From the NCBI GenBank assembly GCA_002269645.1, contig NIVC01001541.1:124001-188000 (forward strand): a stretch of 64,000 nucleotides of DNA, written 5' to 3'. The notes beneath the pieces are model-generated. The model worked only from the letters and a program-made list of their open reading frames with translations, was not told the DNA's origin and made no database searches. Made by a program: the position numbers and the translations under genes. Below are positions 1,552 through 42,362 of the stretch, one piece after another; position 1 is the first letter of the stretch; each line of letters starts with the position of its first letter. Source of the DNA: Macrostomum lignano (taxonomy: Eukaryota).

Positions 1552-1574
1552 ACGAAAGGCTTTCTTTCCCAAGA
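1552..1574. repeat. Left target-site duplication of the LINE (acgaaaggctttctttcccaaga)
   Basis: An identical 23-mer occurs at 8694-8716. The flanking bases differ on both sides. Confidence 0.9.
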
Positions 1575-1607
1575 TTTCATTTTTCATTTTATAAGTACGA
1601 GCGCTTC

Positions 1608-1624
1608 AGCCCCTATCCGGGGCT
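1608..1624 (-). other. 3'-terminal stem-loop AGCCCC-GGATA-GGGGCT (LINE 3' recognition element)
   Basis: A perfect 6-bp stem with a GGAUA loop lies about 20 nt from the A/TGAAA tail. The same loop sequence is described for the eel UnaL2 3' tail. Confidence 0.75.
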
Positions 1625-2458
1625 CTTACGCTACTAATTATATTTAGTTTTCCGAATTGGTGTAAAATTAGTTCGATATTTGTGAAAAGATCTATAAAAC
1701 AGTAAAACAAATTTCATGTGGTGACTATAAAAATATTTGGTGCACTATAAAAATATTTGGTGCAGAAAATCAATTAAATATAAAACAATTGGTGCAATAA
1801 AACAAATAAAACTGCATTAATAATGAATATTTTGTGTAATAAGTTGACTAAGTATAAGTGGAACAATAAAAGAAGATATTTTTCAGTTAATATAGTTTAA
1901 ATAGCAGTTTAATAGAGGGTGTTAATAATAATAAAACAAATAAATACCATTTAAATAAATCACAAAGGTATTAGGGTCTGTTTGGACTTGTCTTTTTACA
2001 GAATTTGTAATTTATCTGCGGATAAATCAAAAAGGGGACAACCATGTTCTAAAAATACTACCACCAAAAAAAAAGTGCTGACCCTACGAAAACGAAGTTT
2101 TCGCAAAGGGGGAACCAGATTTTTGAAACTATAAATACCGTTCCTGATCCTACAGGGGCAAGCATAGCTTACTCAGACGAAGTTAAGGGCCTCATGGTCC
2201 ATCTGGTTTGGGGTTCCAGATTTAAAACGTCCCCCGGCCTGAGTGAGCTGCAGTGCAGACTAAATGAACTAAACTAAGTGCGGACAAAGCAGCCTCGTGT
2301 CCCTACGGGGAATAAGCTCGGGCAGCCGTTCCGTCATACGGCAAAATTTTTTTCTTTTTGTGACAGACTGTCCAATCAGACTCAAACAGTAATTACAGCA
2401 TGATTTCAACCGTGAGAGGATCTCACCAAGGAACGGCTCGAGGTGAGTTTATTAAATT

Positions 2459-5311
2459 TTATTGATTAATGGCTTTCCTAAATTTAGTAGTGACTGGTTC
2501 TTTAAACCCTGGTCTGCACCATAATTTTTTATCAGAGTGAAAGTCATGCACTTCTGTAAGCAGAACTTTTTTGTACCACCTAAGGCCTAGGTTCCATATC
2601 CTATCCCTAAGCCTAGGCATCTTGGTAGTTTCATGTAGGTAACTAATTTTTGTGTATCTAGGGGCACCAAGCACAATTCTCAGTGCCTGATTTTGAAGCC
2701 GCTGTAGTTTCTGCATGAGGGCATCAGAGGTGTTGATCAGTATTGGAGCACCATAGGTCATGCCGCTTTCAATGTAGGACCTATAAAGAAGTCGCAGAGC
2801 AAGTTGGGAGATTCTCGTATTGCGAGCTAGCCTTCGCAAAGCTTCGAGTCTGGCGATGGATATGCCAGCAGCCTTTGAGATATGATGACTATAGTTGAGA
2901 TCCTTGTCAAGAGCGATGCCAAGGAAAGTGACAGAATCATGATAAGGAATCAAATCCTGTCCAAGTTTAAGCGGAGGTTTGGCAGGGCCAGTGGAGAAAT
3001 TACTCTTGAACCTGAAGAAGGCCATCGCCTTGCTTTTAGTTGGATTGATGGAAATTCCAATATCGTCTAGCCATTTCTTAAGCACAACAAGATAGCTGTT
3101 CAACTTCTTAGCCACAATCGCAGACGTTCTGGCGCTCGCCCAAACAGCCAGGTCGTCCGCAAACTGGCTTTTCTTAACCTTGATATCACGCGATTCAGGG
3201 ATCGTACTGACGTAGATGATGAAGAGCAGCGGTGAGAGGACTCCACCCTGAGGAACGCCTGCAGCAGGCTTGAAACCTTCGCTGATCGCCCCTCCAGCCT
3301 GGATGGAGATTTCCCTATCTTCAAGATAGCTGGACAAGGTCCTAATCATGTTGTGTGGCAGGTCACTCTCCAGGAGACGATACCTAAGATAGCTGTGCCA
3401 AACACCGTCGAAGGCACCCTTGACGTCGAAGAAGACACCAAGTGACACATGTCTCCATTGCTTCATTTTTAGTATATCGTCTGTGAGTCGCACAATGTTG
3501 TCAAACGTACAGTGATCTTGTCTGTACGCACATTGGTCTTCATTAATAATACCCTTGTTTTCTAAGATAATTCTAAGATTCCTAGCAATAATCTTTTCGT
3601 AGAGTTTACCCAAGCAAGAGGTTAAGCTAATTGGTCTGTAGTTGTTGATTTCATTTCTAGATTTTTTAGGTTTAGGGATCATTTTGATTGTTGCCCGCTT
3701 CCAGGCTTTGGGAAAATAGCCCAGAAGAAAGCTTGAATTGAAAATTTTTGCAATGGATCTAACAGAGTCCGGGCTAAGCCCCCGTTTGAGGACGATATTT
3801 GGGATCTGGTCAGGGCCGGGAGCTCCCCCAGATCTGAGGTTTTTAGTTTCCGTGAGGACATCAATATCTAGTATGTTGAGGATATCAGATTCTAAATCTT
3901 CCTTATCAGGATCATCAGGGTCAGCCCTGTCCCTATGGTAGGTCAGAGCTCTGACCATGCAGTCATGGGGCCGGAAATTCTCATGATTTTCCTTTAAAAC
4001 AACCTTTTTGTAGAGAAGGGAATTGATGTCCGGGTGAGGTTGCATTTGGTCCTCAAGAAAATCTTGAAACAGGTTTGCAGTTTCTTGCTCAGTTTCAGCA
4101 GTCTTCCCATTGTAGCTAAGGGTAGGAAAAGAGACTGGTTTGATGGATTGACCGGTCATTTTTTTGATATCAATCCAGAATTGACGCGGTTCCTTCCTAT
4201 AGCTAGTTTTAGCAATTTTCTGACACAAGTTCTCAAATTTTCTATACCTGTGCATTCTAATAGCATTTCTTATTTCTTTAGCAGCTTGGTTTGCCTGAAC
4301 TCTAAAAGCGTCAATTCTGGTTTTTTTGAAAAGTTTTCGAAGCTTTCTTCTGTTCTTGATTTTTTCAACGATGTCTGGAGGAAGCTGTTCTCTCGGATCT
4401 CTGTCTGGGACCACTTCTTCAATAGTTTCATGTATTTTTTCCGTGAGCTTGTCAACCGCGTTGTCTAGATCTTCGGGAGTAGAGATTCGGGAACGAATCA
4501 TACTGCAGTTTTCTAATTTATCTTGCAGAGCATACTTAAATGCCTCCCAGTCAGTATGCCAAAAACTCTTACGAGGCCTGGGTTTAATTTTAGAGCCGGG
4601 GTCGATAAAGATCCTAATGATAATAGGGAGGTGGTCACTGTCAAGGTCATCGCCCACAAGGACGTCGCTGACAGAGTTAATAAAGTCAGGAGAGCAAATG
4701 CCTAGATCCAGGACATTCCCAACCGTGTTGCCCCCTCTATTATAAATTCGGGTGCAATCACCAAAGGTGTTAAGAATATATGGGGGGTTTGGGTGATTGT
4801 CAAGCCAATCATACAGTTGTTTGCCAGGGTAGTTATCAACACTGTCACCGCCCAGCATAGCGTGTCTACAGTTGAGATCTCCAATGATTAGAGATCTGGG
4901 TTGGGAGAGCAACTGCTCAAGCAGAGTAATGCTAATGTTGTCAGGGTTGGGAGCTCTGTAGAGGAGGGAGATCCTAAAAGTGCTGCATGGATTATAGTTA
5001 GGAGTGACATCGAGGCTGACAAGCTCATGGTGGGAATTGTCATAATATTTATGAACATTTGATATTTTTAGGGTATTTTTATAGGCAATAGCCAGTCCCC
5101 TTCTACAGTCAGGAATGTCAAACCTGATAATGGCATATCCTTGTACGTAGAACTTATCATTATTTTTAAGATCAGTTTCTGAGAATAGACCAATGTCAAT
5201 ATCAACACTGTGCAACCACATTATAATCTCATGCATTTTATTGCTAAGTTTGTTACAGTTCAGGTGTCCTATATTTAGAGTGCTATTAGGAGAATTAATA
5301 TCGAAAGCCAT
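2459..5311 (-). CDS. LINE ORF2: AP-endonuclease + reverse transcriptase, no RNase H (950 aa)
   Basis: APE motifs: HLNCN, FSETD, IIGDLNCRH, LDL, SDHLP. RT motifs: GAPGPDQIP, YRPISLTSCLGKLYEKII, DVKGAFD, GVPQGGVLSPLLF, QFADD. Confidence 0.97.
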   Translation of the reverse strand: MAFDINSPNSTLNIGHLNCNKLSNKMHEIIMWLHSVDIDIGLFSETDLKNNDKFYVQGYAIIRFDIPDCRRGLAIAYKNTLKISNVHKYYDNSHHELVSLDVTPNYNPCSTFRISLLYRAPNPDNISITLLEQLLSQPRSLIIGDLNCRHAMLGGDSVDNYPGKQLYDWLDNHPNPPYILNTFGDCTRIYNRGGNTVGNVLDLGICSPDFINSVSDVLVGDDLDSDHLPIIIRIFIDPGSKIKPRPRKSFWHTDWEAFKYALQDKLENCSMIRSRISTPEDLDNAVDKLTEKIHETIEEVVPDRDPREQLPPDIVEKIKNRRKLRKLFKKTRIDAFRVQANQAAKEIRNAIRMHRYRKFENLCQKIAKTSYRKEPRQFWIDIKKMTGQSIKPVSFPTLSYNGKTAETEQETANLFQDFLEDQMQPHPDINSLLYKKVVLKENHENFRPHDCMVRALTYHRDRADPDDPDKEDLESDILNILDIDVLTETKNLRSGGAPGPDQIPNIVLKRGLSPDSVRSIAKIFNSSFLLGYFPKAWKRATIKMIPKPKKSRNEINNYRPISLTSCLGKLYEKIIARNLRIILENKGIINEDQCAYRQDHCTFDNIVRLTDDILKMKQWRHVSLGVFFDVKGAFDGVWHSYLRYRLLESDLPHNMIRTLSSYLEDREISIQAGGAISEGFKPAAGVPQGGVLSPLLFIIYVSTIPESRDIKVKKSQFADDLAVWASARTSAIVAKKLNSYLVVLKKWLDDIGISINPTKSKAMAFFRFKSNFSTGPAKPPLKLGQDLIPYHDSVTFLGIALDKDLNYSHHISKAAGISIARLEALRRLARNTRISQLALRLLYRSYIESGMTYGAPILINTSDALMQKLQRLQNQALRIVLGAPRYTKISYLHETTKMPRLRDRIWNLGLRWYKKVLLTEVHDFHSDKKLWCRPGFKEPVTTKFRKAINQ

Positions 5312-5337
5312 TATGATGTAATATATTTTTTTCCTCT

Positions 5338-8154
5338 TCAGAGCTCAGATCTGCCTCCGCTCACCGAAGTGGCTTTGGCTTCACCTGCCCTGACAGCAGG
5401 CACTCTTCTCGGATTCATGAAGGTCGTCAGGACTTCCGTCACTACCCGAATAGCAAGCTGGCTTGCTTCCCAGGCAGTGAGCAGACGCCCCGGCTCGATC
5501 TCCATGATCCGGTTGAGTGCCCCGAGAACTACCTCGAGCACGTCCCCTTGAGTGAAGCCCCTCTCACCGTTTTCAGCAGAAGAGGTGGCGGCAATGTCAG
5601 TGTTGGTCATAGCAGGCATCTTGGTCTTGGTGGCTGCCTCGTCAAGCGGCGCTGTTGATTGGGCAGCGGCGGCAGCGGCGGCAGTGATTGGCAGTGCTGG
5701 TTGGACAGGAGCGGCAGCAACAGCTGTAGGCGGCATTGCTGATTGGACAGTGGCAGCAGCGGCAGCAGCATCGGACGCTTTGGAGGCTTTATTCTTGTAC
5801 GCAATTGGCCCTAATGTAGGCACCTGACTAACAGCCTCCGCATATGATGCGGGGCCAGGCAAGCCAAAAGTCTCTACTAATGATTGGGTAGGTTCTAAGT
5901 ATCTAGACTGAGCTAATTTAAGTTTTAGTGTTTGTACCCTGTGGTGTTCATTTTCGGTTGCCCTTTCATTAGCATGTTGTACCACTTGACATTTGAATGA
6001 GTAGGCCGGGTGTTCACCACCACAGTTTGCACACCTGAAGCCAGTGTCTTTTGGGCAATCACCGGAAAAGTGCGCCCCGGCACATTTGTTGCAGACGAAG
6101 CCGGCGTTGCACCTGCTCTCGGAGTGACCGAGCCCTTGGCACCTTTGGCACTGGATTTCCTTGACCGGTGGAAGGTTGTGCGATTCTTCGCACCGGAATT
6201 TTAATGCCCCCAGCCTAATGCCATTTTCCAGGCATGTATCGTATGTAGCTCTAGATTTAGTAAACATGCGAATTAAATGTGTTGGTTGTCCTGAGGCTTT
6301 GGAGATGATACGTGTTGCTCCGTCGAATTGTAGGTGTGCTTGATTTTCGTCTAAGTATTCGAGAAGTTCCTCAGCTTCCACGGCTAGAGGAACGCCTTTT
6401 ACGATGAACGAGCGGACCTGTGGCGACTTAAGAGGCTTCCGCAGCCGATCGTCACCTTGATGAAGTGGCCTGTTAGACGGCAGACGCCTAGTGACCGTGT
6501 GCCCATTAATTTCATTAGTTTTTAATGTAGTAGTTAATAAGTTATTCATGTCACTAGGTGAATTTGTAAATACGAGGTATCCAGAGCTATGGTACAGCTC
6601 TTTAACAGACATGATGCGAATATTTGGAAAATTAGTTTTCAAAAAGCTTTCAAACTTAATTGGGTTTTTTGCCTCAACAGGCATTTCAAAAACAACAGGC
6701 GAGATTTTCGTTAGTTTAGACTGCTGATTGCGTGCGCTTGATTGCTGAGCCTGGGCAGATTGCTGGCTGGCTTGATCTGGTTGCTGTGTGTGGGTGCCTG
6801 ATTGCTGTGAGTGAGTGCTTGATTGCTGTGATTGAGTGTTTGCTTGCTGGTTAGTGGCTTGCAGCAGACTGTAGCTATTCGGCTTTTGTGTGTGAGTGTC
6901 AGACGATTGATGCTTTGGCTTAGTGCTTGGCTGCTGAGTGGCTGAGTGTGCTTGCTGAGTGTTTGTGTGTTGCTGAGTGTCGTTAGTTTGCTTGTTGCTA
7001 GACAGAGTGGCTGGTTGCTGAGGCTTGGCTGAGTCAGATCGCTGAGTGCTCTGCTTGTTGTTTTCTTGAGCATCCAGTTTGGTAATTTGAGTGGCTTGTT
7101 CTGATGATTGAGTGATTGGCTGCTGACTGCTAGGTTTGCGCCCCGTGCTACTGTTTGAACGCGATCTAATTCGTCTCAAATTTTCCGCTTCCAGCTCTGC
7201 CCGTCGGCGAACCGAGTCTTCATCATCTAGATCGCAAGTGATGCTGCTGTCGACTGGTAGCACACAAGGATTGGCCTGGTCAGAGACAGGAAGATCTTCC
7301 GGGATCCTACCATCGCGCGTAAGTCTGAACGTGAGGTTGACCCTGAGGTCTTTGACCTTGGGGTCTTTGAGGACCGCGTGTTGAAAGTGCGATTGTGTTG
7401 CCCCGCTCATTATCAGCAGCGAGCCACTGGCGAGTCTTTGTGACCATGCAATGTTTGTTGAGCCTTTGGGGCGCATGTGAAAGTCGCGCGCTGCGCCAAT
7501 CGAGATGGATGCGATAGTCGGATTAGGCCCTAACTCTACCTCGTCATCAGAGTGCCAGGGGATGTTGATCGATCCGTCTTTGTAGAAATTAATCAAACAT
7601 GAGTTGAAGACGGGCAACTGGTACTCAACACTGAGCCAGGTGGCTAAGCTAGTGACAAGGGGATGCCAGTTGTCGTTGGCACTAATTTTAGTACCACCAT
7701 AGGTGTACTCTGGTCCAAACCAAACGATTTTCCGGGCTTCCGGTCTACCGTTGGTGTGGTGGTGAAAGGCTTTCGCCTGAATTTCGTCAACGAGAATTTT
7801 CAAAATTTGATTGTCGCATTTTGTTAGAGCCGATGAATGGTAGCTAATATTGCAATTATTTGATAGATTGTATGATTTGCTGTCTGATTTGTCTGGTTTT
7901 GGTAGTCTAATGATTGTTGTCACACCTTCAGATTTCCTGATTTCTAGACTGCCCCTTTTAGATGGAGGCCGCTCACCCTTTGAGGTACCAGGTGGTGTTT
8001 CTGGCAGTGGCGCGTTTGACGGAGACAGCATGGTTTGTTGTTCGGATCTGCGGACAGGGCCGGCAGAATCTCGGTTGTTCACCTTCTTGGTCGACACCGT
8101 CGGCGGTGAGTCTGTGTCTCGTGAACACCGTTTGCTATTGATTTCGACTTCCAT
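5338..8154 (-). CDS. LINE ORF1 (938 aa): AlkB dioxygenase - Q/S/T-rich linker - RRM-like region - three CCHC knuckles - Ala-rich tail
   Basis: Knuckles CQRCQGLGHSESRC, CNKCAGAHFSGDC and CANCGGEHPAYSFKC lie at 5989-6150, as in Jockey/I-group ORF1. FIVKGVP..EELLEYL precedes them. The AlkB domain is at about aa 103-277. Confidence 0.93.
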   Translation of the reverse strand: MEVEINSKRCSRDTDSPPTVSTKKVNNRDSAGPVRRSEQQTMLSPSNAPLPETPPGTSKGERPPSKRGSLEIRKSEGVTTIIRLPKPDKSDSKSYNLSNNCNISYHSSALTKCDNQILKILVDEIQAKAFHHHTNGRPEARKIVWFGPEYTYGGTKISANDNWHPLVTSLATWLSVEYQLPVFNSCLINFYKDGSINIPWHSDDEVELGPNPTIASISIGAARDFHMRPKGSTNIAWSQRLASGSLLIMSGATQSHFQHAVLKDPKVKDLRVNLTFRLTRDGRIPEDLPVSDQANPCVLPVDSSITCDLDDEDSVRRRAELEAENLRRIRSRSNSSTGRKPSSQQPITQSSEQATQITKLDAQENNKQSTQRSDSAKPQQPATLSSNKQTNDTQQHTNTQQAHSATQQPSTKPKHQSSDTHTQKPNSYSLLQATNQQANTQSQQSSTHSQQSGTHTQQPDQASQQSAQAQQSSARNQQSKLTKISPVVFEMPVEAKNPIKFESFLKTNFPNIRIMSVKELYHSSGYLVFTNSPSDMNNLLTTTLKTNEINGHTVTRRLPSNRPLHQGDDRLRKPLKSPQVRSFIVKGVPLAVEAEELLEYLDENQAHLQFDGATRIISKASGQPTHLIRMFTKSRATYDTCLENGIRLGALKFRCEESHNLPPVKEIQCQRCQGLGHSESRCNAGFVCNKCAGAHFSGDCPKDTGFRCANCGGEHPAYSFKCQVVQHANERATENEHHRVQTLKLKLAQSRYLEPTQSLVETFGLPGPASYAEAVSQVPTLGPIAYKNKASKASDAAAAAATVQSAMPPTAVAAAPVQPALPITAAAAAAAQSTAPLDEAATKTKMPAMTNTDIAATSSAENGERGFTQGDVLEVVLGALNRIMEIEPGRLLTAWEASQLAIRVVTEVLTTFMNPRRVPAVRAGEAKATSVSGGRSEL
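7324..7848 (-). other. AlkB-family 2OG-Fe(II) dioxygenase domain (ALKBH2/3-like) within ORF1
   Basis: NSCLINFYKDG..IPWHSDDEVELG.NPTIASISIGAARDF..GSLLIMSGATQSHFQHAV..RVNLTFR contains N-x-Y, H201-x-D203, H259 and R271-x5-R277. It closely parallels human ALKBH3 (WHSDDEPSLG..IIASLSFGATR..GTLLIMEGATQ..WQH..RVNLTFR). Confidence 0.93.
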
Positions 8155-8678
8155 AGGCCTTTAAAACCGTGGCCAAGATACAAGATAAGTCCTTAAAACT
8201 TAAAACTTAAAACTTAAAACTATATAAAAATAAAACTCAAACTCAAATAATGCTACTATAAGTAGGCCTAAGTCGGCTAAATACAAAAAAAGGGTCCTTA
8301 TTCTACCACGTCACTAAAACCCTTATCAACAACTGCCTGGCGCCTCGCTGCAGAAGTCGCGCGCCGCCGGTTGCAGACCGCAGAGCGAAGCCTGGCGCCG
8401 CCTGAAGCCGCAGCTGAGCCACCGAGCCGCCGCCGCCGCTGAACCGCCGAGCCGCCTGGCCGAGCCGAGCCGCCGAGCCGCCGGAGACGTCGAAGCAGCC
8501 GGAGTCGCAGAAGCAGCCGAAGTCGCTGAAGCAGCCGAAGTCGTCGCAGAGAGCCAGAAGCTGATGCCAACGCCAGGTGAGTCGTCACCACAGATGCTAA
8601 AGCCCTCTATAGTCAGGAACCACCCGTAGGCCTACACTGTAGATACCTGTAGTGGTTCAAAAACTATAGAGTTTATTA

Positions 8679-8692
8679 GTTACCATGGCAAC
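8679..8692. promoter_or_regulatory. RFX X-box GTTACCATGGCAAC at the 5' tip of the LINE
   Basis: A near-palindromic, full match to the X-box consensus GTHNYY-AT-RRNAAC, 1 nt inside the TSD. Function is inferred. Confidence 0.55.
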
Positions 8693-8693
8693 G

Positions 8694-8716
8694 ACGAAAG
8701 GCTTTCTTTCCCAAGA
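8694..8716. repeat. Right target-site duplication of the LINE
   Basis: Identical to 1552-1574. Confidence 0.9.
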
Positions 8717-12249: not shown

Positions 12250-13879
12250 GCGTTGCAAAGTCTACTCCAGAAATGGACGCTGCAAAGTCTACTATGGAAA
12301 TGGACGTTCCAAAGTCTACTACAGAAATGGACGTTGCAAAGTCTACAACAGAAATGGACGCTGCAAAGTTCACTACAGAAATGGACGCTGCAAAGTTCAC
12401 TACAGAAATGGACGCTGCAAAGTCTACTACAGAAATGGACGTTGCAAAGTTCACTACAGAAATGGACGCTGCAAAGTTCACTACAGAAATGGACGCTGCA
12501 AAATCTACTATGGAAATGGACGCTGCAAAGTTCACTACAGAAATGGACGTTGCAAAGTCTACTACAGAAATGGGCGTTGCAAAGTCTACTATGGAAATGG
12601 ACGCTGCAAAAATCACTACAGAAATGGACGCTGTAAAGTTCACTACAGAAATGGACGCTGCAAAGTCTACTACAGAAATGGACGCTGCAAAGTTCACTAC
12701 AGAAATGGACGCTGCAAAGTCTACTACAGAAATGGGCGTTGCAAAATCTACTACAGAAATGGATGCTGCAAAGTCTACTTCAGAAATGGGCGTTGCAAAG
12801 TTCACTACAGAAATGGACGCTGCAAAGTTCACTACAGAAATGGACGCTGCAAAGTTCACTACAGAAATCGACGCTGCAAAGTTCACTACAGAAATGGACG
12901 CTGCAAAGTTCACTACAGAAATGGACGCTGCAAAGTTCACTACAGAAATGGACGCTGCAAAGTTCACTACAGAAATGGACGCTGCAAAGTTCACTACAGA
13001 AATGGACGCTGTAAAGTTCACTACAGAAATGGACGCTGCAAAGTTCACTACAGAAATGGACGCTGCAAAGTTCACTACAGAAATGGACGCTGCAAAGTTC
13101 ACTACAGAAATGGACGCTGCAAAGTTCACTACAGAAATGGACGCTGCAAAGTTCACTGCAGAAATGGACGCTGCAAAGTTCACTACAGAAATGGACGCTG
13201 CAAAGTTCACTACAGAAATGGACGCTGCAAAGTTCACTACAGAAATGGACGCTGCAAAGTTCACTACAGAAATGGACGCTGCAAAGTTCACTACAGAAAT
13301 GGACGCTGCAAAGTTCACTACAGAAATGGACGCTGCAAAGTTCACTACAGAAATGGACGCTGCAAAGTTCACTACAGAAATGGACGCTGCAAAGTTCACT
13401 ACAGAAATGGACGCTGCAAAGTTCACTACAGAAATGGACGCTGCAAAGTTCACTACAGAAATGGACGCTGCAAAGTTCACTACAGAAATGGACGCTGCAA
13501 AGTTCACTACAGAAATGGACGCTGCAAAGTTCACAACAGAAATGGACGCTGCAAAGTTCACTACAGAAATCGACGCTGCAAAGTTCACTACAGAAATGGA
13601 CGCTGTAAAGTTCACTACAGAAATGGACGCTGCAAAGTTCACTACAGAAATGGACGCTGCAAAGTTCACTACAGAAATGGACGCTGCAAAGTTCACTACA
13701 GAAATGGACGCTGCAAAGTTCACTACAGAAATGGACGCTGCAAAGTTCACTACAGAAATGGACGCTGCAAAGTTCACTACAGAAATGGACGCTGCAAAGT
13801 TCACTACAGAAATGGACGCTGCAAAGTTCACTACAGAAATGGACGCTGCAAAGTTCACTACAGAAATGGACGCTGCAAA
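12250..13879. repeat. 27-bp minisatellite (ctacagaaatggacgctgcaaagttca), about 60 copies
   Basis: Head-to-tail units with no spacers. It is homogeneous on the right and more diverged on the left. Confidence 0.97.
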
Positions 13880-14940: not shown

Positions 14941-16640
14941 GCTGGCTGGACAAGCAGCTGGAGGATAAGGACAGGCACCTTATTAACGAATCGGGAACAG
15001 AAGATATGAGTGAAGAAAACGATAGGAGAGGAAAATACAGTAACCCATGGCATAAGTGCAATCGTTCTCTTTTACCAAAAAAACCTATAACTATTCTTTC
15101 AATCAGCCAACTCAAGTTATTTTTTATAAATTATATTTCAGCTGATGAGCAGCCCTAGCGTATTGCAGTTTACCAGAGCTGCACAGCTCAACCAGGTCTT
15201 ACCTGTACAGTCTGCACACGCACAGTTACAAAGTACGGAGACAGCGTAGTTCAGTCTGAACTGGTCGAATTTCTCTCATTTACAGCTGGATCATTGCAAG
15301 GGACTGGGGCTAGAGATGACAAATAAATCAATATTAATTATACTAATTACTACTGAAAGTAGCATGCCAGCCACCTGTGAGCTTAAATTAATTAGTAAAA
15401 TCGTTCGGTTTGGCCTCCACTGCGCAGTTGCTGAGGTTGCACTTGATAGGTACTTTTCTATGTACAATTTCTAAAACTGGCTTGAAGTTTTTATCCGTCG
15501 ATACGAAGCACTGTCTGAATCCCCCTGTGGAAAATGTTTATAACCAGATAGAATAAGCTTCGCTGGAAGTGTCGCAGCTGTTATGCATCTGCAGTTAAAA
15601 ACCTCCCACGATCAAGCGAAGGCGCACCAAAACAAGTCAAAATCTTCTCTCAGCAACTGGAAACTCAGACACTAAAATCACGGGCTGGGCCACTTACGAG
15701 TTGCATACTCTGATTTAGGCACTGGGGGGTCGTACTATACGAGTAAAGCTGTCGTAGCCTAAGTTCGATCGTACGTCGGAACTTTTACACTGCGGAGATA
15801 GGAGCTAAGAAAGATCTTATCTTACGATGGCTTTATAGAACAGGCCCATTACCTGCTTGCATAAACATTTAGCAGCGTGAATCATGTGACAATTGCCTCT
15901 ATGACCGTTTGCTCTCGCTGCAATCGGCTGGGCACAGTAAAAACTTAAAATCTTACCAATGAGACAGAAGCATTGTGCACTGAGATGGTGCGGCTGCACT
16001 CACAAACAGCTTATTTTTTATTTAGCATTGCGCTAAACCCTTGAAAAACAATGGCTGAGAGAACTCTAATTTATGACGAGCATTCACGCAACAGAATAAA
16101 ATATTGCAGTTTTGTCTCGGACAACATGACGATTAATGAGCTTGAGACAGATATACGTAGCCTTTAGTTGAAACACTGCATGCATTCTTTCTGCGCTCGG
16201 TGGCAATGGTTAAAGTGTTTTTCAGCTTTTGTGCGCGCATCGGACAATGGAGCCGAACTTCTGTTCCATTGCGCTCATCATCACCTGTACAAGACTGTTT
16301 GGCGACTCCGATGAGCACTGAGAGATGAGCATAGCAGCAGGGTTTGAAACTGAGAGTTTGATGTGAGCTTGTTCCTCTCGAACTGTTTGCTCATTTTGTG
16401 TCCTTCCTCCACAGTCTGGGATTAACAGGTAGTTAACAGCTGTTGGCTGGAGTTGAAAATCAGATGAGGAGAGGAGAGCAAAAAGGCTCAGAAGAGGGTT
16501 GGAAGAAGATGGAATAATGGACCTCAATGTGATTTTTTGTGACACTTTCAACTGTAGTCATCATAATTCTAATCAAGAAAAGGATGCTGCTGTGTCTTGT
16601 GCCTTTTGCTGCAACTAAACTATACTAACTAAGATAAGAG

Positions 16641-17558
16641 GAGAGGGGAGGAGAGGAGAGGAGAGGAAAGGAGAGGAGAGGAAAGGAGAGGAGAGGAGAG
16701 GAGAGGAGAGGAGAGGAGAGGAGAGGAGAGGAGAGGAGAGGAGAGGAGAGGAGAGGAGAGGAGAGGAGAGGAAGAGGAGAGGAGAGGAGAGGAGAGGAGA
16801 GGAGAGGAGAGGAGAGGAGAGGAGAGGAGAGGAGAGGAGAGGAGAGGAGAGGAGAGGAGAGGAGAGGAGAGGAGAGGAAGAGGAGAGGAGAGGAGAGGAG
16901 AGGAGAGGAGAGGAGAGGAGAGGAGAGGAGAGGAGAGGAGAGGAGAGGAGAGGAGAGGAGAGGAGAGGAGAGGAAGAGGAGAGAGAGAGAGGAGAGGAGA
17001 GGAGAGGAGAGGAGAGGAGAGGAGAGGAGAGGAGAGGAGAGGAGAGGAGAGGAGAGGAGAGGAGAGGAGAGGAGAGGAGAGGAGAGGAGAGGAGAGAGAG
17101 GAGAGGAGAGGAGAGGAGAGGAGAGGAGAGGAGAGGAGAGGAGAGGAGAGGAGAGGAGAGGAGAGGAGAGGAGAGGAGAGGAGAGGAGAGGAGAGGAGAG
17201 AGAGGAGAGGAGAGGAGAGGAGAGGAGAGGAGAGGAGAGGAGAGGAGAGGAGAGGAGAGGAGAGGAGAGGAGAGGAGAGGAGAGGAGAGGAGAGGAGAGG
17301 AGAGGAGAGGAGAGGAGAGGAGAGGAGAGGAGAGGAGAGGAGAGGAGAGGAGAGGAGAGGAGAGGAGAGGAGAGGAGAGGAGAGGAGAGGAGAGGAGAGG
17401 AGAGGAGAGGAGAGGAGAGGAGAGGAGAGGAGAGGAGAGGAGAGGAGAGGAGAGGAGAGGAGAGGAGAGGAGAGGAGAGGAGAGGAGAGGAGAGGAGAGG
17501 AGAGGAGAGGAGAGGAGAGGAGAGGAGAGGAGAGGAGAGGAGAGGAGAGGAGAGGAGA
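16641..17558. repeat. (GGAGA)n pentanucleotide satellite, about 0.9 kb
   Basis: Near-perfect pure-purine tract. Confidence 0.98.
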
Positions 17559-18636
17559 GAAGAAAAAAGTAAGCTGAACTAAGCTAAGTCACAGTTGCAC
17601 AATAGAAGGAGAACTTCAGTTTTGCCTGCACAATCTGCGAGCATCTCCAGTGTACACCCGACAGGTGCGCACTGTGGAGTAAAGCTAAATGAGTACAGAA
17701 ACCTGTGAAGCCGGACCCATGCAAGCTTGGTGTCTTCTGGATACGAGGATTGAATTGCCTCGACGCTTATTTTGGGACGATTTTGCCGAAGGCGTTGCGC
17801 CAGGATGCCCGCAGCCTTCCCGCTGATGTTTTTTAAGGCGGATATTGTGCTGAAGTTCAAGAGTCTGACAGACGAGTTTAGGGAGTTAAAAACATCTGGT
17901 CTTGTGTGCTCAGGCACTGAGCACGATAATGGCTGCCTGCTGCCGGACCCCAGGAGAGCCGGAGGCCAGTCAGCCTCAGCCAGAGCTGGGAAACTGGGCC
18001 TGTACTCTTGTGCTTGCGTACATGTATTTATTAGCGAAGTTTTTGGTCAAAACAAAATTTTCGAGCTGAAATTTTGGAGTAAATATTTATAACATTCGAT
18101 TTTTAAATATATTTATATATTTTTTTTTGAACAATTCCATGCTTATACTTATAAAACACACAGGAGCTCAATCAGAGTGCTTTGAGAAAAACAAATATAA
18201 AAATAAGAACTACTTGAATGTCTCAAATTTTTTCAAAGGACCACCGAAAACTACGCGGTGCTCAGGGTGCTCTATACGATGAGGCATGGGATTTGAGATG
18301 ATGTGGATGGGATAATTTTACACGAGACATGGCTTTTGAGCACGGAAATTCGGTGCGCGAAAATACAGAATACATTAATAAATTTCTTTTTCATTGTCAT
18401 TTGTTTAATTTTTAATCCAATTTTTCAATTTTCCGTCCAAAGTCAGTAAAGATTAGAATTGTCAGCATGAGGTAAAACTACGCTTGGAGAGCAACACGAG
18501 ATCATGTAAGCAGCGGTTGCGAGAAAGAAAAAGTTTCCAAGCCAGAGGCACTTCAGAGGCAACTATGCAGAGAAACTACGCAATTTCCACCAGTCAGTGC
18601 CAAAATAGACTTTTGGATGGCGAGACTCCACGGCAC

Positions 18637-20834
18637 CTACTCTGCCTTCTCATCCACGTTGTGCAGCAGCGAGGTGAGGTACAGGTTCAGCGCCAGGTCG
18701 CCGCCAGCCAGGTTGGCATTGAAGCTGCCCGAACACCTGGGACACCTGGCTTCCAACATGTGTCCCGAGAACTCCGACACCAGAGAATCCCTTTTGCAGA
18801 GCGGGCACTGATAGGTGGAATTCTGCAGACCCTTCAGCGAGGCAAACAGCTTTTCAGCGACGCCCGGTCCGCGCTCTTTGAAGGCGGCTCTCTCGGACGC
18901 AGTCAGCTGCTCCTCGGTCCAGAACACATCGATAAAGTTCATTTCGAGCACGGCTGCGCTCTGCACTCTGAAGAAGCCGCCGTCGCCCCAGCTGGAGCCC
19001 CACGAGTTCATCAGCCTCAGGCTGTGTCTGTCGAAGCTCATCAGAGCCACCGCGTGTCCGAAAGTCTCTGATGCAACGAGTCTTTGGCTGATGTCGAGTT
19101 CCGACTTCGTGAGAATGCATTTGGGATTCTGATCGAAGAACTGCTTGAAGTTGCCCCACTCAGCCTTAGAAAGGCGGAACGTGGCCACGACTGGCCGCTT
19201 GGCGATGACGGCCTCCAGCGCGGCTCTCTCGTTGACCTCCTTGCACTGCAGCCGGTACTCCGGACACACTGTCCGCAGCACCTCGACTGTGCGGGCTCTG
19301 CGCGTTCCGAACTGAGCGACGATCTTGTTTCTGAGCTGGAAGAAGTCCGGATATCCGCCGTCTCGACCCACAACCCTGAGCATGCTCAGGTGCATGGCGG
19401 TCGCCGACGCGACTGCATAGCAGGTGAGCTCCGACTGTCGCTTCGGATCAAAGCCCTCGTTGGCCCTGTTGATGTACAGGTCGAGGTCCACATCGGCCAG
19501 CACGTCTGACAGCGCGTCCTGAGAGCACACGCAGCTCTTGGCGATATCGCAGACCTCATCGATGAGGTCGGGGTGATTGATCTGGAAGAACAGTCGGGTC
19601 TCATTGTTGTCTGTGTCGATTGTCCAGCCCTTTCGGATGAAGAGGGTTCTGGGGATCTTCTGGGTGGAGACCGTCGAAGCCATGTCGAACATGAACTTCG
19701 CAGGTTGATCCCAGTTGATTTCGAATGTGCTGTAGAGCCGTCGTGGATCACAGATGTCGCTGTCCGTGATGTAGCAGGACACAATTGTGGCGCCCATATG
19801 CTTCAGCTCCTCTGGATCATTTTTGCGATTCGGTTGTTTCTCCTCGGCTAATGCTTTCACCCCTAGGGCTACTAATCTTGAAAAAATACCGCCGAAACTA
19901 CTAAAACTACTAACCGTATTCTCATCATCCGTCGGTACTCCGTCCGAAAGAACGAACAAAAGCTTGAAATGATCCTTGTAGGATGCGTGGCTAAACAGTG
20001 TTTTGGACTGCTTGAGAGAAGCTAACAAAGGAGTTGCTCCGTAGATGCAGGGCTCAATGGCTTTAATAAGTTCGTCGATTTTTTATCAGTCAGATTTTCT
20101 CGTCTGTTACCGCCAGAGTTCAGAATTTGCTCTGCTGTTTTCACAGAAACAACTGATCGCACCGAAACGGACTCTAGCGAGCGTTTCTGCTTCAAATAAT
20201 TCTCACAGTCTGCAACAACTTTTTTCATGCTGTCCTCCGTTGCCCCGTCCATTACGGTGTTTGAAATCAGTGCTAATGGCGTGTAAGAGGCAATTCTTCC
20301 TAAAAAATTAAATCCCTCAGAAACAATGTTTGTGGCTTTGAATTCTCTGCACTGATCAGGCAGAATTTGTTCCGCTAATGTTCTTCGAAAATCATTGTCA
20401 GTTCGAAGGGCGTCGAGGATGATGCTGGCTGTCTGAATGTCGACAACGGAGCGCAGCACACTCCTCCTGGCCCAGTTTCGAACTCGGGGAGCGCCACTGC
20501 TTTGAAGTATATCAAGTGCTTCATCAAATATTTGATCCAATGTAAACCTCTCTTGAATTTGACGAATCCTCTCCTCCCGCTCACGAGCCTTCTCAATGGA
20601 CGCCAGAACATCGAACACCTGTGGCTCATTGTGAGCCCCCACGCCAAGCATAAACACCCGGTTAGCTTCAGATACATCGTTTTTCACCAGCTGATCACCG
20701 ACTTGAAATATGGATCTGACCCACTTTTGCTTGGCTGCCCCCGCCACCTGCCGGCTGTCGAACGTCCGCTCCATGGAGCCGGACACATCCAGCAGAGCTC
20801 CGGTGAGCACCGTCCTGGCTGGTTGCTCCTGCAT
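18637..20834 (-). CDS. Apparently intronless vWA domain + papain-like (C1) cysteine protease + C-terminal Zn ribbon protein (about 732 aa after repair of one frameshift near 20080)
   Basis: vWA: MIDAS LLDVSGSME, YGATPL, LFVLSDG.PTD. Protease: RQSELTCYAVAS (Gln..Cys), GHAVAL, MNSWGSSWGDGGFFRV. Zn ribbon: CPLC..CPRC. The two track ORFs join if the A6 run at 20079-20084 is A7. Confidence 0.8.
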
Positions 20835-39107: not shown

Positions 39108-39730
<623 letters not shown>

Positions 39731-40321: not shown

Positions 40322-41472
40322 CTCTCTCTCCCATCCGCCCTCTCCCATCCGCCCTCTCCCATCCGCCCTCTCCCATCCGCCCCTCTCCCATCCGCCCTCT
40401 CCCATCCGCCCTCTCTCATCCGCCCCTCTCCCATCCGCCCTCTCCCATCCGCCCTCTCCCATCCGCCCCTCTCCCATCCGCCCTCTCCCATCCGCCCCTC
40501 TCTCATCCGCCCCTCTCCCATCCGCCCTCTCCCATCCGCCCCTCTCCCATCCGCCCTCTCCCATCCGCCCCTCTCTCATCCGCCCCTCTCCCATCCGCCC
40601 CTCTCCCATCCGCCCCTCTCCCATCCGCCCTCTCCCATCCGCCCCTCTCTCATCCGCCCCTCTCCCATCCGCCCCTCTCTCATCCGCCCCTCTCCCATCC
40701 GCCCCTCTCCCATCCGCCCCTCTCCCATCCGCCCCTCTCCCATCCGCCCTCTCCCATCCGCCCCTCTCCCATCCGCCCCTCTCTCATCCGCCCCTCTCCC
40801 ATCCGCCCCTCTCCCATCCGCCCCTCTCTCATCCGCCCCTCTCCCATCCGCCCCTCTCCCATCCGCCCTCTCCCATCCGCCCCTCTCTCATCCACCCTCT
40901 CCCATCCGCCCCTCTCTCATCCGCCCTCTCCCATCCGCCCCTCTCCCATCCGCCCCTCTCTCATCCGCCCCTCTGTCATCCGCCCTCTCCCATCCGCCCT
41001 CTCCCATCCGCCCCTCTCTCATCCGCCCCTCTCCCATCCGCCCCTCTCCCATCCGCCCCTCTCCCATCCGCCCCTCTCCCATCCGCCCTCTCCCATCCGC
41101 CCCTCTCTCATCCGCCCCTCTCCCATCCGCCCCTCTCCCATCCGCCCTCTCCCATCCACCCCTCTCTCATCCGCCCCTCTCCCATCCGCCCTTCTCTCAT
41201 CCGCCCCTCTCTCATCCGCCCCTCTCTCATCCGCCCCTCTCCCATCCACCCTCTCCCATCCGCCCTCTCCCATCCGCCCCTCTCCCATCCGCCCTCTCCC
41301 ATCCGCCCTCTCCCATCCGCCCTCTCCCATCCGCCCCTCTCCCATCCACCCCTCTCCCATCCGTCCTCTCCCATCCGCCCCTCTCTCATCCGCCCCTCTC
41401 CCATCCACCCTCTCATATCCGCCCCTCTCGAATTGACTTTCCCATCCGCCCCTCCCATCCGCCCCTCTCCCA
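40322..41472. repeat. 14/15-bp ctcccatccgccc(c)t minisatellite
   Basis: Visible tandem units. Confidence 0.96.
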
Positions 41473-42362
41473 TCGGGCCGGAACCCGCACCAACATTGTA
41501 TGGTTGCTAGAAGGATGCAACAAGCAGACGGTTCAACAATAAGCCAGAGACATCTCCACCGCAGAAATTCCAAGCAGCTCAACTGTCAGTGTTTACTGAT
41601 CAGTTCTCCCAGTCAGAACTTCCTGCTTCCTTTTCGTCGAGAATTAATCGTTGAGTCAGCCGGTAGAGCTCCTCAATAATCCTCTGCTGCTGCCTTGGTG
41701 ACAAGACCGAACCTGTTGCGTGCATTGAAACAAAACAGAGCCGAGTGGCTGGCAGGCGGGGAAAAATAATAAGGAATAAAATGCGTGTCCTGTACCGGCT
41801 CCAAATGCCCGAATTTCCATGATAAACAGATCCGCAATGTTTGGTCTGGAAGCCACGGCGATACGAGCGTAGAGATGTCCCTCCGACAGCTGCCCGCGTG
41901 GTTGCTGACTGAGCCGGAGCTTCCTGAGCGCCATTGGGAAAAACAAATAAAAATGTGACAGCCTCTGCAGATTAATTAGCGGATTATAATTCATCAATTC
42001 TGCTCAAATTTGGCGCGAAGAATCCGCGGGAGCGCTTGATCTGGTCACGTGACCATTGTGTTGTTCTCCATTGTCATTCCGGTCTGAATATTGTTGTCTT
42101 TGAATGAATTGCAAAAGGAAAGTTGGACCTGACAATGTCGCCCTGAGCTCGGCACAAGTCTGCCTGCAACTCTGTGAATCCGCTGCGATTGCACGGGAAT
42201 CCCTTTGTTTCGCTCTGCTTCCCTTTGTCGGCTGCCATTCCTCCCGGGAATCAATTATCCTGGCCTGCCGACGGGTCCGACTGGGATGCCGTCGTACATT
42301 GGCTTGCCAGAAAGACATGAACTCACAACAGAAATTGTGACGCTATGAATCAGAAGGTCAAG

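What the first reader, a model, noticed from the sequence alone, without database searches (positions are those of the whole stretch)
5338..8154. LINE ORF1 protein fused to a catalytically complete AlkB nucleic-acid demethylase
Seen: aa 103-277 of the Gag-like ORF1 form an ALKBH2/3-like domain with every Fe/2OG ligand intact (HxD..H, RxxxxxR, NxY). It is in frame with the RRM-like region and three CCHC knuckles, and joined by a long Q/S/T-rich linker, in an intact TSD-flanked element. Known: ALKBH3-type enzymes oxidatively remove m1A/m3C from ssDNA and RNA, these lesions block reverse transcriptases, and several plant RNA viruses carry AlkB in their replicases. ORF1 accessory domains usually cited for LINEs are PHD, esterase, RRM and CCHC. 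Inference: because ORF1p coats the element's RNA in many copies, this element may carry its own RNA/cDNA repair or anti-methylation enzyme inside the RNP. That would protect the template or counter methylation-based host silencing. I cannot confirm from memory whether AlkB-ORF1 LINEs have been formally described.
Basis: partly seen in the sequence, partly recalled or inferred. Interest (0 to 1): 0.92.

Follow-up and report, generated by a model that had tools for sequence, protein, structure and literature searches.

The report
LINE ORF1 fused to AlkB demethylase
A recently active LINE retrotransposon of the flatworm Macrostomum lignano has a complete ALKBH2/3-type nucleic-acid demethylase built into its RNA-coating ORF1 protein; the design recurs in several deeply diverged retroelement lineages, I found no published description of it, and it suggests these elements clean methyl lesions off their own template.

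Summary
The window is Macrostomum lignano DNA. It holds a 7,119-bp LINE on the minus strand (1575-8693) between perfect 23-bp target-site duplications. ORF1 (938 aa) reads N-terminal AlkB domain, Q/S/T-rich linker, two RRMs, three CCHC knuckles and a C-terminal helix. ORF2 is APE+RT.

The AlkB domain passes Pfam (E=1.6e-28) and keeps N189/Y191, H201/D203/H259 and R271/R277. Its model superposes on human ALKBH3/ALKBH2 (TM 0.8), not on ALKBH5.

It is not a one-off. A second 99.8%-identical copy lies at another locus with its own TSD. A second M. lignano lineage and four families from an unidentified organism share the architecture at about 40% identity, with every catalytic residue kept. AlkB has the lowest dN in ORF1. 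An AlkB ORF also precedes a Penelope-like RT/GIY-YIG ORF on one contig.

Retroelement AlkBs form a moderately supported clade apart from the host's spliced ALKBH3-like gene. Their origin is unresolved.

The best reading is in-cis oxidative removal of RT-blocking m1A/m3C from the element's RNA or cDNA. This is inferred, not assayed. I found no prior description. The nearest precedents are an orchid Gypsy ALKBH5-like ORF and plant-virus AlkB domains.

The parts
8694..8716 (.). Target-site duplication, 5' side of the element (23 bp)
   Evidence: Exact direct repeat of 1552-1574
1575..8693 (-). Full-length LINE (7,119 bp)
   Evidence: Bounded by the TSDs. The whole span aligns at 99.83% to a second copy at a different locus (L001) that has its own 21-bp TSD.
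8155..8693 (-). 5' UTR (539 nt) with a GC-rich repetitive stretch at about 8300-8600
   Evidence: Sequence read. It is shared with the L001 copy and with the gene model P0003.
5338..8154 (-). ORF1, 938 aa: AlkB, linker, two RRMs, three CCHC knuckles, C-terminal helical region
7315..7881 (-). AlkB (Fe(II)/2OG dioxygenase) domain, aa ~92-280; N189/Y191, H201/D203/H259, R271/R277
   Evidence: Pfam E=1.6e-28. PDB hit to ALKBH3 at 3.7e-24. AF2 pLDDT 88.2, pTM 0.86. Foldseek TM 0.79-0.84 to ALKBH3/ALKBH2. Residues.
6697..7314 (-). Acidic/coil segment, then a Q/S/T-rich low-complexity linker (aa 281-486)
   Evidence: Composition. This is the least conserved part of ORF1 in related families.
6184..6696 (-). 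Two tandem RRM folds (aa ~487-557 and ~581-657)
   Evidence: AF2 gives beta-alpha-beta-beta-alpha-beta topology twice. Foldseek hits are tandem RRM1-2 proteins at probability 1.0.
5989..6150 (-). Three CCHC zinc knuckles (aa 669-722)
   Evidence: Regex. The Cys/His columns are invariant across families.
5341..5988 (-). C-terminal Ala/Pro-rich region ending in a conserved helical segment (aa 723-938)
   Evidence: Long helix in the AF2 model. The terminal block is conserved in alignment A1.
2459..5311 (-). ORF2, 950 aa, starting 26 nt after the ORF1 stop codon
4619..5281 (-). APE-type endonuclease domain (ORF2 aa 11-231)
   Evidence: Pfam Exo_endo_phos and Exo_endo_phos_2
2912..3673 (-). Reverse transcriptase domain (ORF2 aa 547-800; FADD motif present)
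   Evidence: Pfam RVT_1 at E=3e-34. Translation.
1575..2458 (-). 3' UTR (884 nt)
1600..1632 (-). 3'-terminal stem-loop (inner stem AGCCCC/GGGGCU)
   Evidence: MFE -24.6 kcal/mol, z=-4.09. L007 has the same inner stem and a different but still pairing outer stem.
1575..1590 (-). 3' tail of short (A)ATGAAA-type repeats
   Evidence: The repeat number differs in the L001 copy.
1552..1574 (.). Target-site duplication, 3' side of the element (23 bp)

Best explanation
This is an autonomous APE-type LINE of Macrostomum lignano. Its ORF1 protein is a standard type I nucleic-acid-binding protein (two RRMs and three CCHC knuckles) that has an ALKBH2/3-type Fe(II)/2-oxoglutarate dioxygenase attached to its N-terminus through a flexible linker of about 200 residues. 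Shown: the architecture, its integrity, its recent mobility, its recurrence in deeply diverged lineages, and the constraint on the AlkB domain. Inferred: ORF1p binds the element's own RNA in cis in many copies, so the RNP is studded with tethered demethylases. These oxidatively remove N1-methyladenine and N3-methylcytosine, and perhaps related N-alkyl lesions, from the single-stranded template RNA and possibly from nascent cDNA or exposed target ssDNA. Such lesions block Watson-Crick pairing and stall reverse transcriptases, so removing them would raise the yield of full-length insertions.
For: Domain identity: Pfam E=1.6e-28; best solved relatives are ALKBH3 then ALKBH2; the model (pLDDT 88) has TM 0.79-0.84 to ALKBH3/2 against about 0.6-0.67 for ALKBH5, ALKBH6 and EcAlkB. 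Catalytic competence: N-x-Y, H-x-D, the distal H, R-x5-R and the H[SA]DDE motif are present in the window and in all eight aligned relatives that retain the domain, at only 27-44% overall identity. Not a one-off: a second 99.83% copy sits at another locus with its own TSD and both ORFs intact. A second M. lignano lineage (L011) has AlkB + RRM + frameshifted APE-RT. Four Logan families (P0127, P0128, P0129, P0133) have AlkB-2xRRM-3xCCHC ORF1s followed by APE or APE-RT. Divergence from the window is similar for AlkB (39-43%), RRM/CCHC (about 35%) and ORF2 (about 41%), as expected for co-inheritance. Constraint: AlkB has the lowest dN in ORF1 in both pairs tested (0.21 and 0.30, against 0.28 and 0.34 for RRM/CCHC and 0.47-0.70 for linker and termini). 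RNA binding in the same chain: tandem RRMs and knuckles. Established knowledge, not tested here: ALKBH3 prefers single-stranded DNA and RNA carrying m1A/m3C, these lesions stop reverse transcriptases, and plant-virus AlkB domains repair RNA.
Against: There is no biochemical or expression evidence, so activity and substrate are inferred from homology. The N-terminal substrate lid is shortened and lacks the PWxQ motif of cellular homologues, so specificity could differ from ALKBH3. dS is saturated in the pairs used, so dN/dS values are only rough. It is not shown that m1A/m3C loads on LINE RNA are high enough in vivo to be selectable. The host has its own ALKBH3-like gene, which raises the question of why a private copy is needed. 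In M. lignano subfamilies the AlkB module is 96% identical while the rest of ORF1 is 36-57% identical. That pattern fits recombination as well as constraint.
Confidence: 0.6

Rival explanations
1. The domain erases a regulatory RNA methyl mark (m6A or similar) written by the host. This would let the element's transcript escape reader-mediated decay or silencing, acting as counter-defence rather than repair.
For: The orchid Ty3/Gypsy AlkB ORF has m6A demethylase activity in vitro, and its authors proposed this role (PMC9289625). A tethered eraser on the RNP would act on the element's own RNA.
Against: The domain is ALKBH2/3-type, not ALKBH5/FTO-type: TM 0.8 against about 0.6, and only ALKBH3/2 appear in the PDB sequence search. 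In human cells m6A promotes L1 and ALKBH5 suppresses it (abstract of PMC7873242, listed), so erasing m6A is not obviously beneficial to a LINE.
Confidence: 0.15
2. The enzyme acts in trans on host nucleic acids, for example tRNA m1A/m3C or genomic DNA lesions or marks at the integration site. It would change translation, stress signalling or chromatin to the element's advantage.
For: From general knowledge, ALKBH3 also acts on tRNA. A demethylase on a long flexible linker could reach substrates other than the bound RNA (linker).
Against: Fusion to the element's own RNA-coating protein argues for action in cis. The same fusion is kept in every lineage rather than as a free ORF. There is no direct evidence.
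Confidence: 0.1
3. The AlkB fold serves as a non-catalytic nucleic-acid-binding or chaperone module, and the enzyme function has been lost.
For: Inactive enzyme-derived domains occur in retroelements, for example the DIRS1 methyltransferase-like domain judged inactive in PMC4738411. The lid region is reduced.
Against: All Fe(II) and 2OG ligands are kept in every lineage at about 40% identity. This is not expected if only binding mattered.
Confidence: 0.08
4. The fusion is an accident: a one-off exon capture from the host ALKBH3 gene, a chimeric assembly, or a decaying passenger.
For: None beyond prior plausibility.
Against: Two independent insertions have different TSDs. Several deep lineages share the same architecture. 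The host ALKBH3-like gene is spliced, carries the ALKBH3 insertion that the element lacks, and falls outside the retroelement clade. The domain is the most conserved part of ORF1.
Confidence: 0.01

Closest known systems
Human ALKBH3 / ALKBH2 (AlkB-family repair dioxygenases)
   Same: Same fold and the same Fe(II)/2OG ligand set. These are the best solved relatives by sequence (E=3.7e-24 and 3.5e-18) and by structure (TM 0.79-0.84, about 32% identity). The H[SA]DDE motif is shared.
   Different: Here the domain is part of a retrotransposon ORF1p rather than a free cellular enzyme. It lacks the ~8-residue insertion of metazoan ALKBH3 before the 'GSLL' strand. It has a shortened N-terminal lid without PWxQ, and a one-residue deletion in the R-K-x-x-W-[FY]-G-P motif. 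It falls outside the metazoan ALKBH3 group in the tree.
AlkB domains in plant RNA-virus replicases (Alpha-/Betaflexiviridae, Closteroviridae)
   Same: A selfish RNA-templated replicator carries its own AlkB. The proposed role is repair or demethylation of its own RNA (PMC544882 listed; discussion of PMC9289625).
   Different: The viral domain sits inside a replicase polyprotein, not in the RNA-coating protein. Viral structures share the fold but only 15-30% identity, which is more distant than bacterial AlkB or ALKBH3. The replication mode is RdRp rather than reverse transcription.
Phalaenopsis Ty3/Gypsy 'paALKBH5-like' ORF (PMC9289625)
   Same: This is the only transposable element with an AlkB domain that I found in the literature. 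It is a retrotransposon and the domain is retained in the family.
   Different: It is an LTR element in a plant. The AlkB lies in a separate extra ORF. It is ALKBH5-like, an m6A eraser shown in vitro, and was acquired recently in one orchid lineage. Here the element is a LINE in an animal, the domain is fused into ORF1p, it is ALKBH2/3-type, and it is shared by lineages about 40% diverged.
Type I LINE ORF1p (RRM(s) + CCHC knuckle; I, Jockey, R1, Tad1, L2 and others)
   Same: The C-terminal half fits the definition quoted in PMC4120745: an RRM immediately upstream of CCHC knuckles.
   Different: None of the five ORF1 types, and none of the 448 Jockey-superfamily ORF1s surveyed there, is described with an AlkB or dioxygenase domain; the words do not occur in the paper.
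Type III LINE ORF1p with an esterase domain (PMC3905857)
   Same: This is a precedent for an enzyme fold inside a LINE ORF1p (title and abstract).
   Different: It is a different enzyme class (a lipid-related hydrolase, not a nucleic-acid demethylase) and no link to template repair has been proposed.

Membership tests
AlkB family, ALKBH2/3-like subgroup of Fe(II)/2OG dioxygenases | Match to Pfam 2OG-FeII_Oxy_2 above the gathering score | tested here: met
   100.7 bits against a 31.2-bit cutoff, E=1.6e-28
AlkB family, ALKBH2/3-like subgroup of Fe(II)/2OG dioxygenases | Fe(II) facial triad H-x-D...H | tested here: met
   H201, D203 and H259. Conserved in all relatives that keep the domain and invariant in a 58-sequence alignment.
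AlkB family, ALKBH2/3-like subgroup of Fe(II)/2OG dioxygenases | 2-oxoglutarate-binding R-x5-R and N-x-Y | tested here: met
   R271/R277 and N189/Y191, invariant columns
AlkB family, ALKBH2/3-like subgroup of Fe(II)/2OG dioxygenases | Double-stranded beta-helix fold closest to ALKBH2/3 rather than ALKBH5, FTO or EcAlkB | tested here: met
   On a predicted model only: TM 0.79-0.84 to ALKBH3/2 against 0.57-0.67 for the others
AlkB family, ALKBH2/3-like subgroup of Fe(II)/2OG dioxygenases | Full nucleotide-recognition lid as in cellular homologues | tested here: inconclusive
   The lid region is shorter, lacks PWxQ and has lower pLDDT (62) around model residues 41-50
AlkB family, ALKBH2/3-like subgroup of Fe(II)/2OG dioxygenases | Oxidative demethylation of m1A/m3C | not testable with these tools
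   Needs a biochemical assay
Orthologue of metazoan ALKBH3 (host-derived) | Groups with metazoan ALKBH3 and carries its characteristic insertion | tested here: not met
   The insertion is absent. The domain lies outside the ALKBH3 group and apart from the host's spliced ALKBH3-like gene P0156. Deep branching is unresolved.
APE-type LINE (non-LTR retrotransposon) | ORF2 with an N-terminal APE endonuclease and an RT | tested here: met
   Exo_endo_phos(_2) and RVT_1 at E=3e-34
APE-type LINE (non-LTR retrotransposon) | Target-site duplications and independent insertions | tested here: met
   A 23-bp TSD in the window. A second copy has unrelated flanks and a 21-bp TSD.
Type I LINE ORF1p | RRM(s) directly upstream of CCHC zinc knuckle(s) | tested here: met
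   Tandem RRM folds in a predicted model. Three knuckles. Definition quoted.
A named LINE clade (CR1, L2, Rex1, Jockey, I ...) | Placement of the RT in a reference phylogeny | not tested
   No Repbase or Dfam reference set was available. The 3' stem-loop and short-repeat tail only hint at a 'stringent' CR1/L2-like type.
Viral AlkB domains (plant RNA viruses) | Embedded in a replicase polyprotein; close sequence relationship | tested here: not met
   The context is different. Viral matches are 15-30% identical, against 40-48% for bacterial AlkB and ALKBH3.

The most novel reading that the evidence does not exclude
There is an old, retroelement-specific AlkB lineage that moves between retroelement classes. 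It is fused into the ORF1p of a LINE clade and also present in the upstream ORF of a Penelope-like element. If so, base methylation of template RNA (m1A/m3C, spontaneous or host-imposed) would be a general, selectable barrier to reverse transcription in vivo, and some retroelements would overcome it with a built-in repair enzyme.
Probability: 0.35. Interest if true: 0.85.

Novelty: new variant of a known kind. Interest (0 to 1): 0.75.

Why it matters
LINE ORF1 proteins are normally regarded as RNA-binding chaperones, and the only enzyme fold catalogued in them is an esterase. A conserved, catalytically complete nucleic-acid demethylase in ORF1p would be a new functional class of LINE accessory domain.

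It would also parallel RNA viruses and one LTR-element lineage, which acquired AlkB independently. That convergence points to template methylation as a real cost for RNA-templated replicators.

The idea becomes testable in a tractable laboratory animal, since M. lignano has transgenesis. Simple biochemistry and point mutants would do it, and the work might show whether hosts use RNA or DNA alkylation against retroelements.

On the practical side, AlkB-containing 'genes' in flatworm annotations (the Fe2OG proteins of M. lignano in UniProt and NCBI) are at least partly transposon ORF1s. They should not be counted as host ALKBH paralogues.

Tried and rejected
- Searching with the whole ORF1 in the word-indexed protein search gave only two hits because the low-complexity linker swamped the candidates. 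Splitting the query into AlkB and RRM/CCHC parts worked.
- Exact-sequence contig look-ups for P0002, P0123 and the window's ORF2 found nothing.
- I could not identify the organism behind SRR31628392-437 and SRR19430222. A literature search for the run numbers found only an unrelated chicken project. The M. lignano heat-stress RNA-seq data are under a different archive accession. There was no DNA-level match and no near-identical protein fragments against the roughly 130 kb of M. lignano sequence held.
- The first bootstrap tree timed out and was redone with numpy distances.
- dN/dS from near-identical copies is uninformative. Window against L001 has two amino-acid changes and pS=0. The Logan contigs from different runs are identical in DNA.
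- The ~123-aa ORFs between ORF1 and ORF2 in L007 and L013 are not homologous, so I dropped them as a feature.
- AlkB mentions in the krill and tubeworm genome papers concern host ALKBH2 only.
- A viral origin of the domain was considered and not supported.
- A recent host-gene capture was considered and rejected.
Full report
WHAT IS IN THE WINDOW

The window matches contig NIVC01001541.1 of the Macrostomum lignano assembly GCA_002269645.1, a free-living flatworm. On the minus strand there is a 938-aa ORF at 5338-8154. A 950-aa ORF at 2459-5311 follows 26 nt downstream. Pfam places a 2OG-FeII_Oxy_2 (AlkB) domain in the first ORF (E=1.6e-28) and APE endonuclease plus reverse transcriptase domains in the second.

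An exact 23-bp direct repeat at 1552-1574 and 8694-8716 brackets the unit. The element is therefore 1575-8693, or 7,119 bp. It has a 539-nt 5' UTR and an 884-nt 3' UTR, and it ends in a stable stem-loop followed by a few ATGAAA-like repeats. The window contains no other copy.

ORF1 ANATOMY

- The AlkB domain spans about aa 92-280. Its AlphaFold model, built on a 58-sequence alignment, is confident (pLDDT 88.2, pTM 0.86).
- The model superposes on human ALKBH3 and ALKBH2 at TM 0.79-0.84 and about 32% identity. ALKBH5, ALKBH6, ALKBH8 and E. coli AlkB are clearly worse, at TM 0.57-0.67.
- A PDB sequence search gives the same ranking: ALKBH3 at 3.7e-24, ALKBH2 at 3.5e-18, and nothing else at E<=0.01.
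- All cofactor ligands are present: N189/Y191, H201/D203, H259 and R271/R277.
- After a short acidic segment comes a linker of about 200 residues that is 21% Q, 18% S and 11% T.
- The next 170 residues fold as two RRMs (model pLDDT 76.7). All top Foldseek hits are tandem RRM1-2 proteins such as FIR, PABP and HuR, at E about 5e-7.
- Three CCHC knuckles follow at aa 669-682, 688-700 and 708-722, and then an Ala/Pro-rich tail with a conserved terminal helix.

The C-terminal half is thus a textbook type I LINE ORF1p as defined in PMC4120745. The AlkB domain is the unusual addition.

IS IT A ONE-OFF?

It is not.

1. A second full-length copy lies on another contig (L001:9462-16577). It is 99.83% identical, both ORFs are intact, its flanks are unrelated, and it has its own 21-bp TSD. 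The family has therefore transposed recently with the AlkB domain on board.

2. M. lignano protein databases hold diverged ORF1 relatives that also carry the domain: P0002/P0275, P0126, and P0123, which starts inside the AlkB C-terminus.

3. The locus of another M. lignano 'Fe2OG' protein (P0274, L011) has an AlkB domain only 35% identical to the window's. An RRM-like region follows, and then a frameshifted APE-RT that is 38-47% identical. This is a second, old AlkB-LINE lineage in the same genome.

4. An exhaustive HMMER search of 1.84 billion representative proteins with the AlkB domain found only ten proteins at E<=1e-30. All are either M. lignano proteins or long proteins from Logan assemblies. 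Four of the Logan proteins (P0127, P0128, P0129, P0133; 757-962 aa) have the complete AlkB-linker-2xRRM-3xCCHC-helix layout. Each is followed on its contig by APE or APE-RT sequence about 41% identical to the window's ORF2. L007 is a 9-kb contig with the whole element.

All four come from one run series (SRR31628392-437), and their DNA is identical across runs. I could not determine the organism. It may be another species or M. lignano itself.

L007 also shares the 3' stem-loop. The inner stem AGCCCC/GGGGCU is identical. The outer stem differs in sequence but still pairs (AGCGU/GCGCU in the window, GAUCC/GGAUC in L007).

CONSTRAINT

Every relative that retains the domain keeps N-x-Y, H-x-D, the distal His, R-x-N-L-T-F-R and the H[SA]DDE motif, although overall identity to the window is 27-44%.

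Divergence from the window is similar for AlkB (39-43%), RRM/CCHC (about 35%) and ORF2 (about 41%). That fits joint inheritance from a common ancestor rather than repeated capture.

I computed Nei-Gojobori estimates by domain for the two pairs with DNA.

| Pair | dN AlkB | dN RRM/CCHC | dN linker and termini |
|---|---|---|---|
| P0127/P0128 | 0.21 | 0.28 | 0.47-0.70 |
| P0129/P0133 | 0.30 | 0.34 | 0.61-0.65 |

Synonymous sites are saturated (pS 0.61-0.81), so absolute dN/dS values are unreliable. The one AlkB estimate that could be computed is 0.09. The ranking is still clear: AlkB is the most conserved part of ORF1.

ORIGIN OF THE DOMAIN

Outside the retroelements, the best matches are bacterial AlkB proteins of about 200 aa (44-48% identity over the core) and metazoan ALKBH3 (about 40%).

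The host has its own ALKBH3-like gene (P0156/P0279). It is spliced, with 263 aa spread over 3.2 kb, and it lies among ordinary genes.

In the alignment the retroelement AlkBs share signatures absent from both cellular groups:
- R-K-x-x-W-[FY]-G-P with a one-residue deletion;
- N-S-C-L-x-N-[FY]-Y;
- a shortened N-terminal lid without PWxQ.

They also lack the ~8-residue insertion of metazoan ALKBH3.

A neighbour-joining tree with Kimura distances and 300 bootstraps recovers all retroelement AlkBs as one clade. Support is moderate: 64% on the full alignment and 52% on the catalytic core. The clade is separate from the host gene, metazoan ALKBH3 and bacterial AlkB, and its sister group is unresolved.

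Viral AlkB structures share the fold but only 15-30% identity. I conclude that this was not a recent capture from the host or from a plant-type RNA virus. Whether the ultimate source was bacterial or an early eukaryotic ALKBH2/3 remains open.

A SECOND RETROELEMENT CLASS

One Logan contig (L009, SRR19430222) carries a 1,012-aa ORF with an AlkB domain of the same retroelement type. An ORF with RT and GIY-YIG motifs, the Penelope-like combination, starts 108 nt downstream on the same strand. In the tree this AlkB sits inside the LINE AlkB clade. The link rests on a single contig and needs confirmation. If it holds, the module is shared between retroelement classes.

MECHANISM

Shown:
- the fusion itself;
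- its integrity and recent mobility;
- its recurrence in deep lineages;
- the constraint on the domain;
- its ALKBH2/3-type fold;
- tandem RRMs and knuckles in the same polypeptide.

Inferred from established knowledge:
- LINE ORF1 proteins coat their own RNA in cis in many copies.
- ALKBH3-type enzymes remove m1A and m3C from single-stranded DNA and RNA.
- These lesions stop reverse transcriptases.

The most likely function is therefore in-cis oxidative repair of the template RNA, and possibly of nascent cDNA or exposed target ssDNA, within the RNP. The long flexible linker would let the catalytic domain sweep along the bound strand. The reduced lid suggests that substrate capture has been partly handed to the RRM/knuckle module. 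I put this reading at about 0.6.

The rivals are:
- erasure of a regulatory mark such as m6A (0.15). This is disfavoured because the domain is not ALKBH5/FTO-like, and because m6A is reported to help human L1 (PMC7873242 abstract).
- action in trans on host tRNA or DNA (0.1).
- a non-catalytic binding role (0.08), which is disfavoured by complete ligand conservation.
- artefact or accidental capture (0.01).

COMPARISON WITH WHAT IS KNOWN, AND NOVELTY

Searches of the open-access library for AlkB together with non-LTR, LINE, ORF1, Penelope, Repbase or transposable elements found no description of an AlkB domain in a LINE or Penelope-like element.

The only transposable-element precedent is the Phalaenopsis Ty3/Gypsy lineage (PMC9289625). 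Its AlkB is a separate, recently acquired, ALKBH5-like ORF shown to demethylate m6A in vitro. That paper cites RNA viruses as the other carriers of AlkB.

The large survey of Jockey-superfamily ORF1s does not mention AlkB or dioxygenases. The review of eukaryotic AlkB domain architectures by Iyer and colleagues notes PHD, SAD/SRA and AT-hook fusions of ALKBH3, but the passages retrieved mention no retroelement fusion.

Repbase, Dfam and subscription journals could not be searched, so a prior catalogue entry cannot be excluded.

I classify this as a new variant of a known kind: LINE accessory-domain capture, and AlkB in selfish RNA-templated replicators. It is not categorically new.

CAVEATS

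- Structures are predictions.
- The tree is distance-based, and support for the key clade is only moderate.
- dS is saturated.
- The organism behind the Logan contigs is unknown.
- Copy number in the M. lignano genome was not measured.
- The LINE clade was not assigned.
- No expression or activity data were examined.

Noticed in passing
window 1600-1632 (minus strand); L007:8985-9017: A 3'UTR stem-loop just upstream of the short-repeat tail. Its inner stem (AGCCCC/GGGGCU) is identical between the window's element and L007, whose ORF2 is only about 41% identical. The outer stem differs in sequence but still pairs. It could be an RT-recognition hairpin of a 'stringent' LINE type.
   Followed up: partly
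window ORF1 aa 103-345 against aa 346-938 (7120-7848 against 5341-7119): Mosaic ORF1. Against the M. lignano protein P0002, the AlkB domain and the segment after it are 96% and 92% identical, while the linker, RRMs and C-terminus are 36-57% identical, with a sharp break near aa 345. This suggests exchange of the AlkB module between subfamilies, unless it is a chimeric gene model from an older assembly.
   Followed up: partly
L009:2120-5158 and 5266-7398: A 1,012-aa ORF with a retroelement-type AlkB domain lies 108 nt upstream, on the same strand, of a Penelope-like RT + GIY-YIG ORF. The contig is from SRR19430222, organism unknown. AlkB may also be carried by a Penelope-like element.
   Followed up: partly
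L011:10001-15500 (M. lignano contig NIVC01002030.1): The annotated 'Fe2OG dioxygenase' proteins P0274 and P0132 are the ORF1 of a second, degraded AlkB-LINE lineage, since a frameshifted APE-RT follows. Some M. lignano 'ALKBH' gene models are therefore transposon ORFs.
   Followed up: yes
L015:8001-11180: The host's own ALKBH3-like gene (P0156/P0279) is spliced and flanked by ordinary genes. It carries the metazoan ALKBH3 insertion that the element's domain lacks.
   Followed up: yes
window 25964-28081 (minus strand): A 705-aa ORF in a 63% GC stretch has aspartyl protease and integrase core domains. It is part of another retroelement, LTR-type or similar.
   Followed up: no
window 18637-20028 (minus strand): A 463-aa ORF with a weak papain-family (Peptidase_C1) match (E=2e-4, just above the cutoff). 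A 270-aa ORF with no Pfam match at E<=0.001 lies next to it at 20022-20834.
   Followed up: no
window, many sites, e.g. 12254-13879, 16637-17563, 30080-31493, 39109-39730, 40326-41474, 57707-61133, 62887-63998: The window is packed with long mini- and microsatellite arrays, for example a 27-bp unit x60, (AGAGG)x186, a 15-bp unit x94, (CAGA)x155 and a 23-bp unit x149. These create many of the long spurious ORFs on both strands.
   Followed up: no
window 8300-8600 (minus strand, 5' UTR of the element): A GC-rich, internally repetitive stretch (GGCTGCTTC-like units) lies in the 5' UTR. It is translated as the N-terminus of the gene model P0003, so some annotations splice the UTR into the AlkB domain.
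   Followed up: no
L001:3468-4241: A weak RT-like match (26% identity to the window's ORF2 aa 497-764) lies about 5 kb upstream of the second copy. It is probably a fragment of an unrelated LINE.
   Followed up: no
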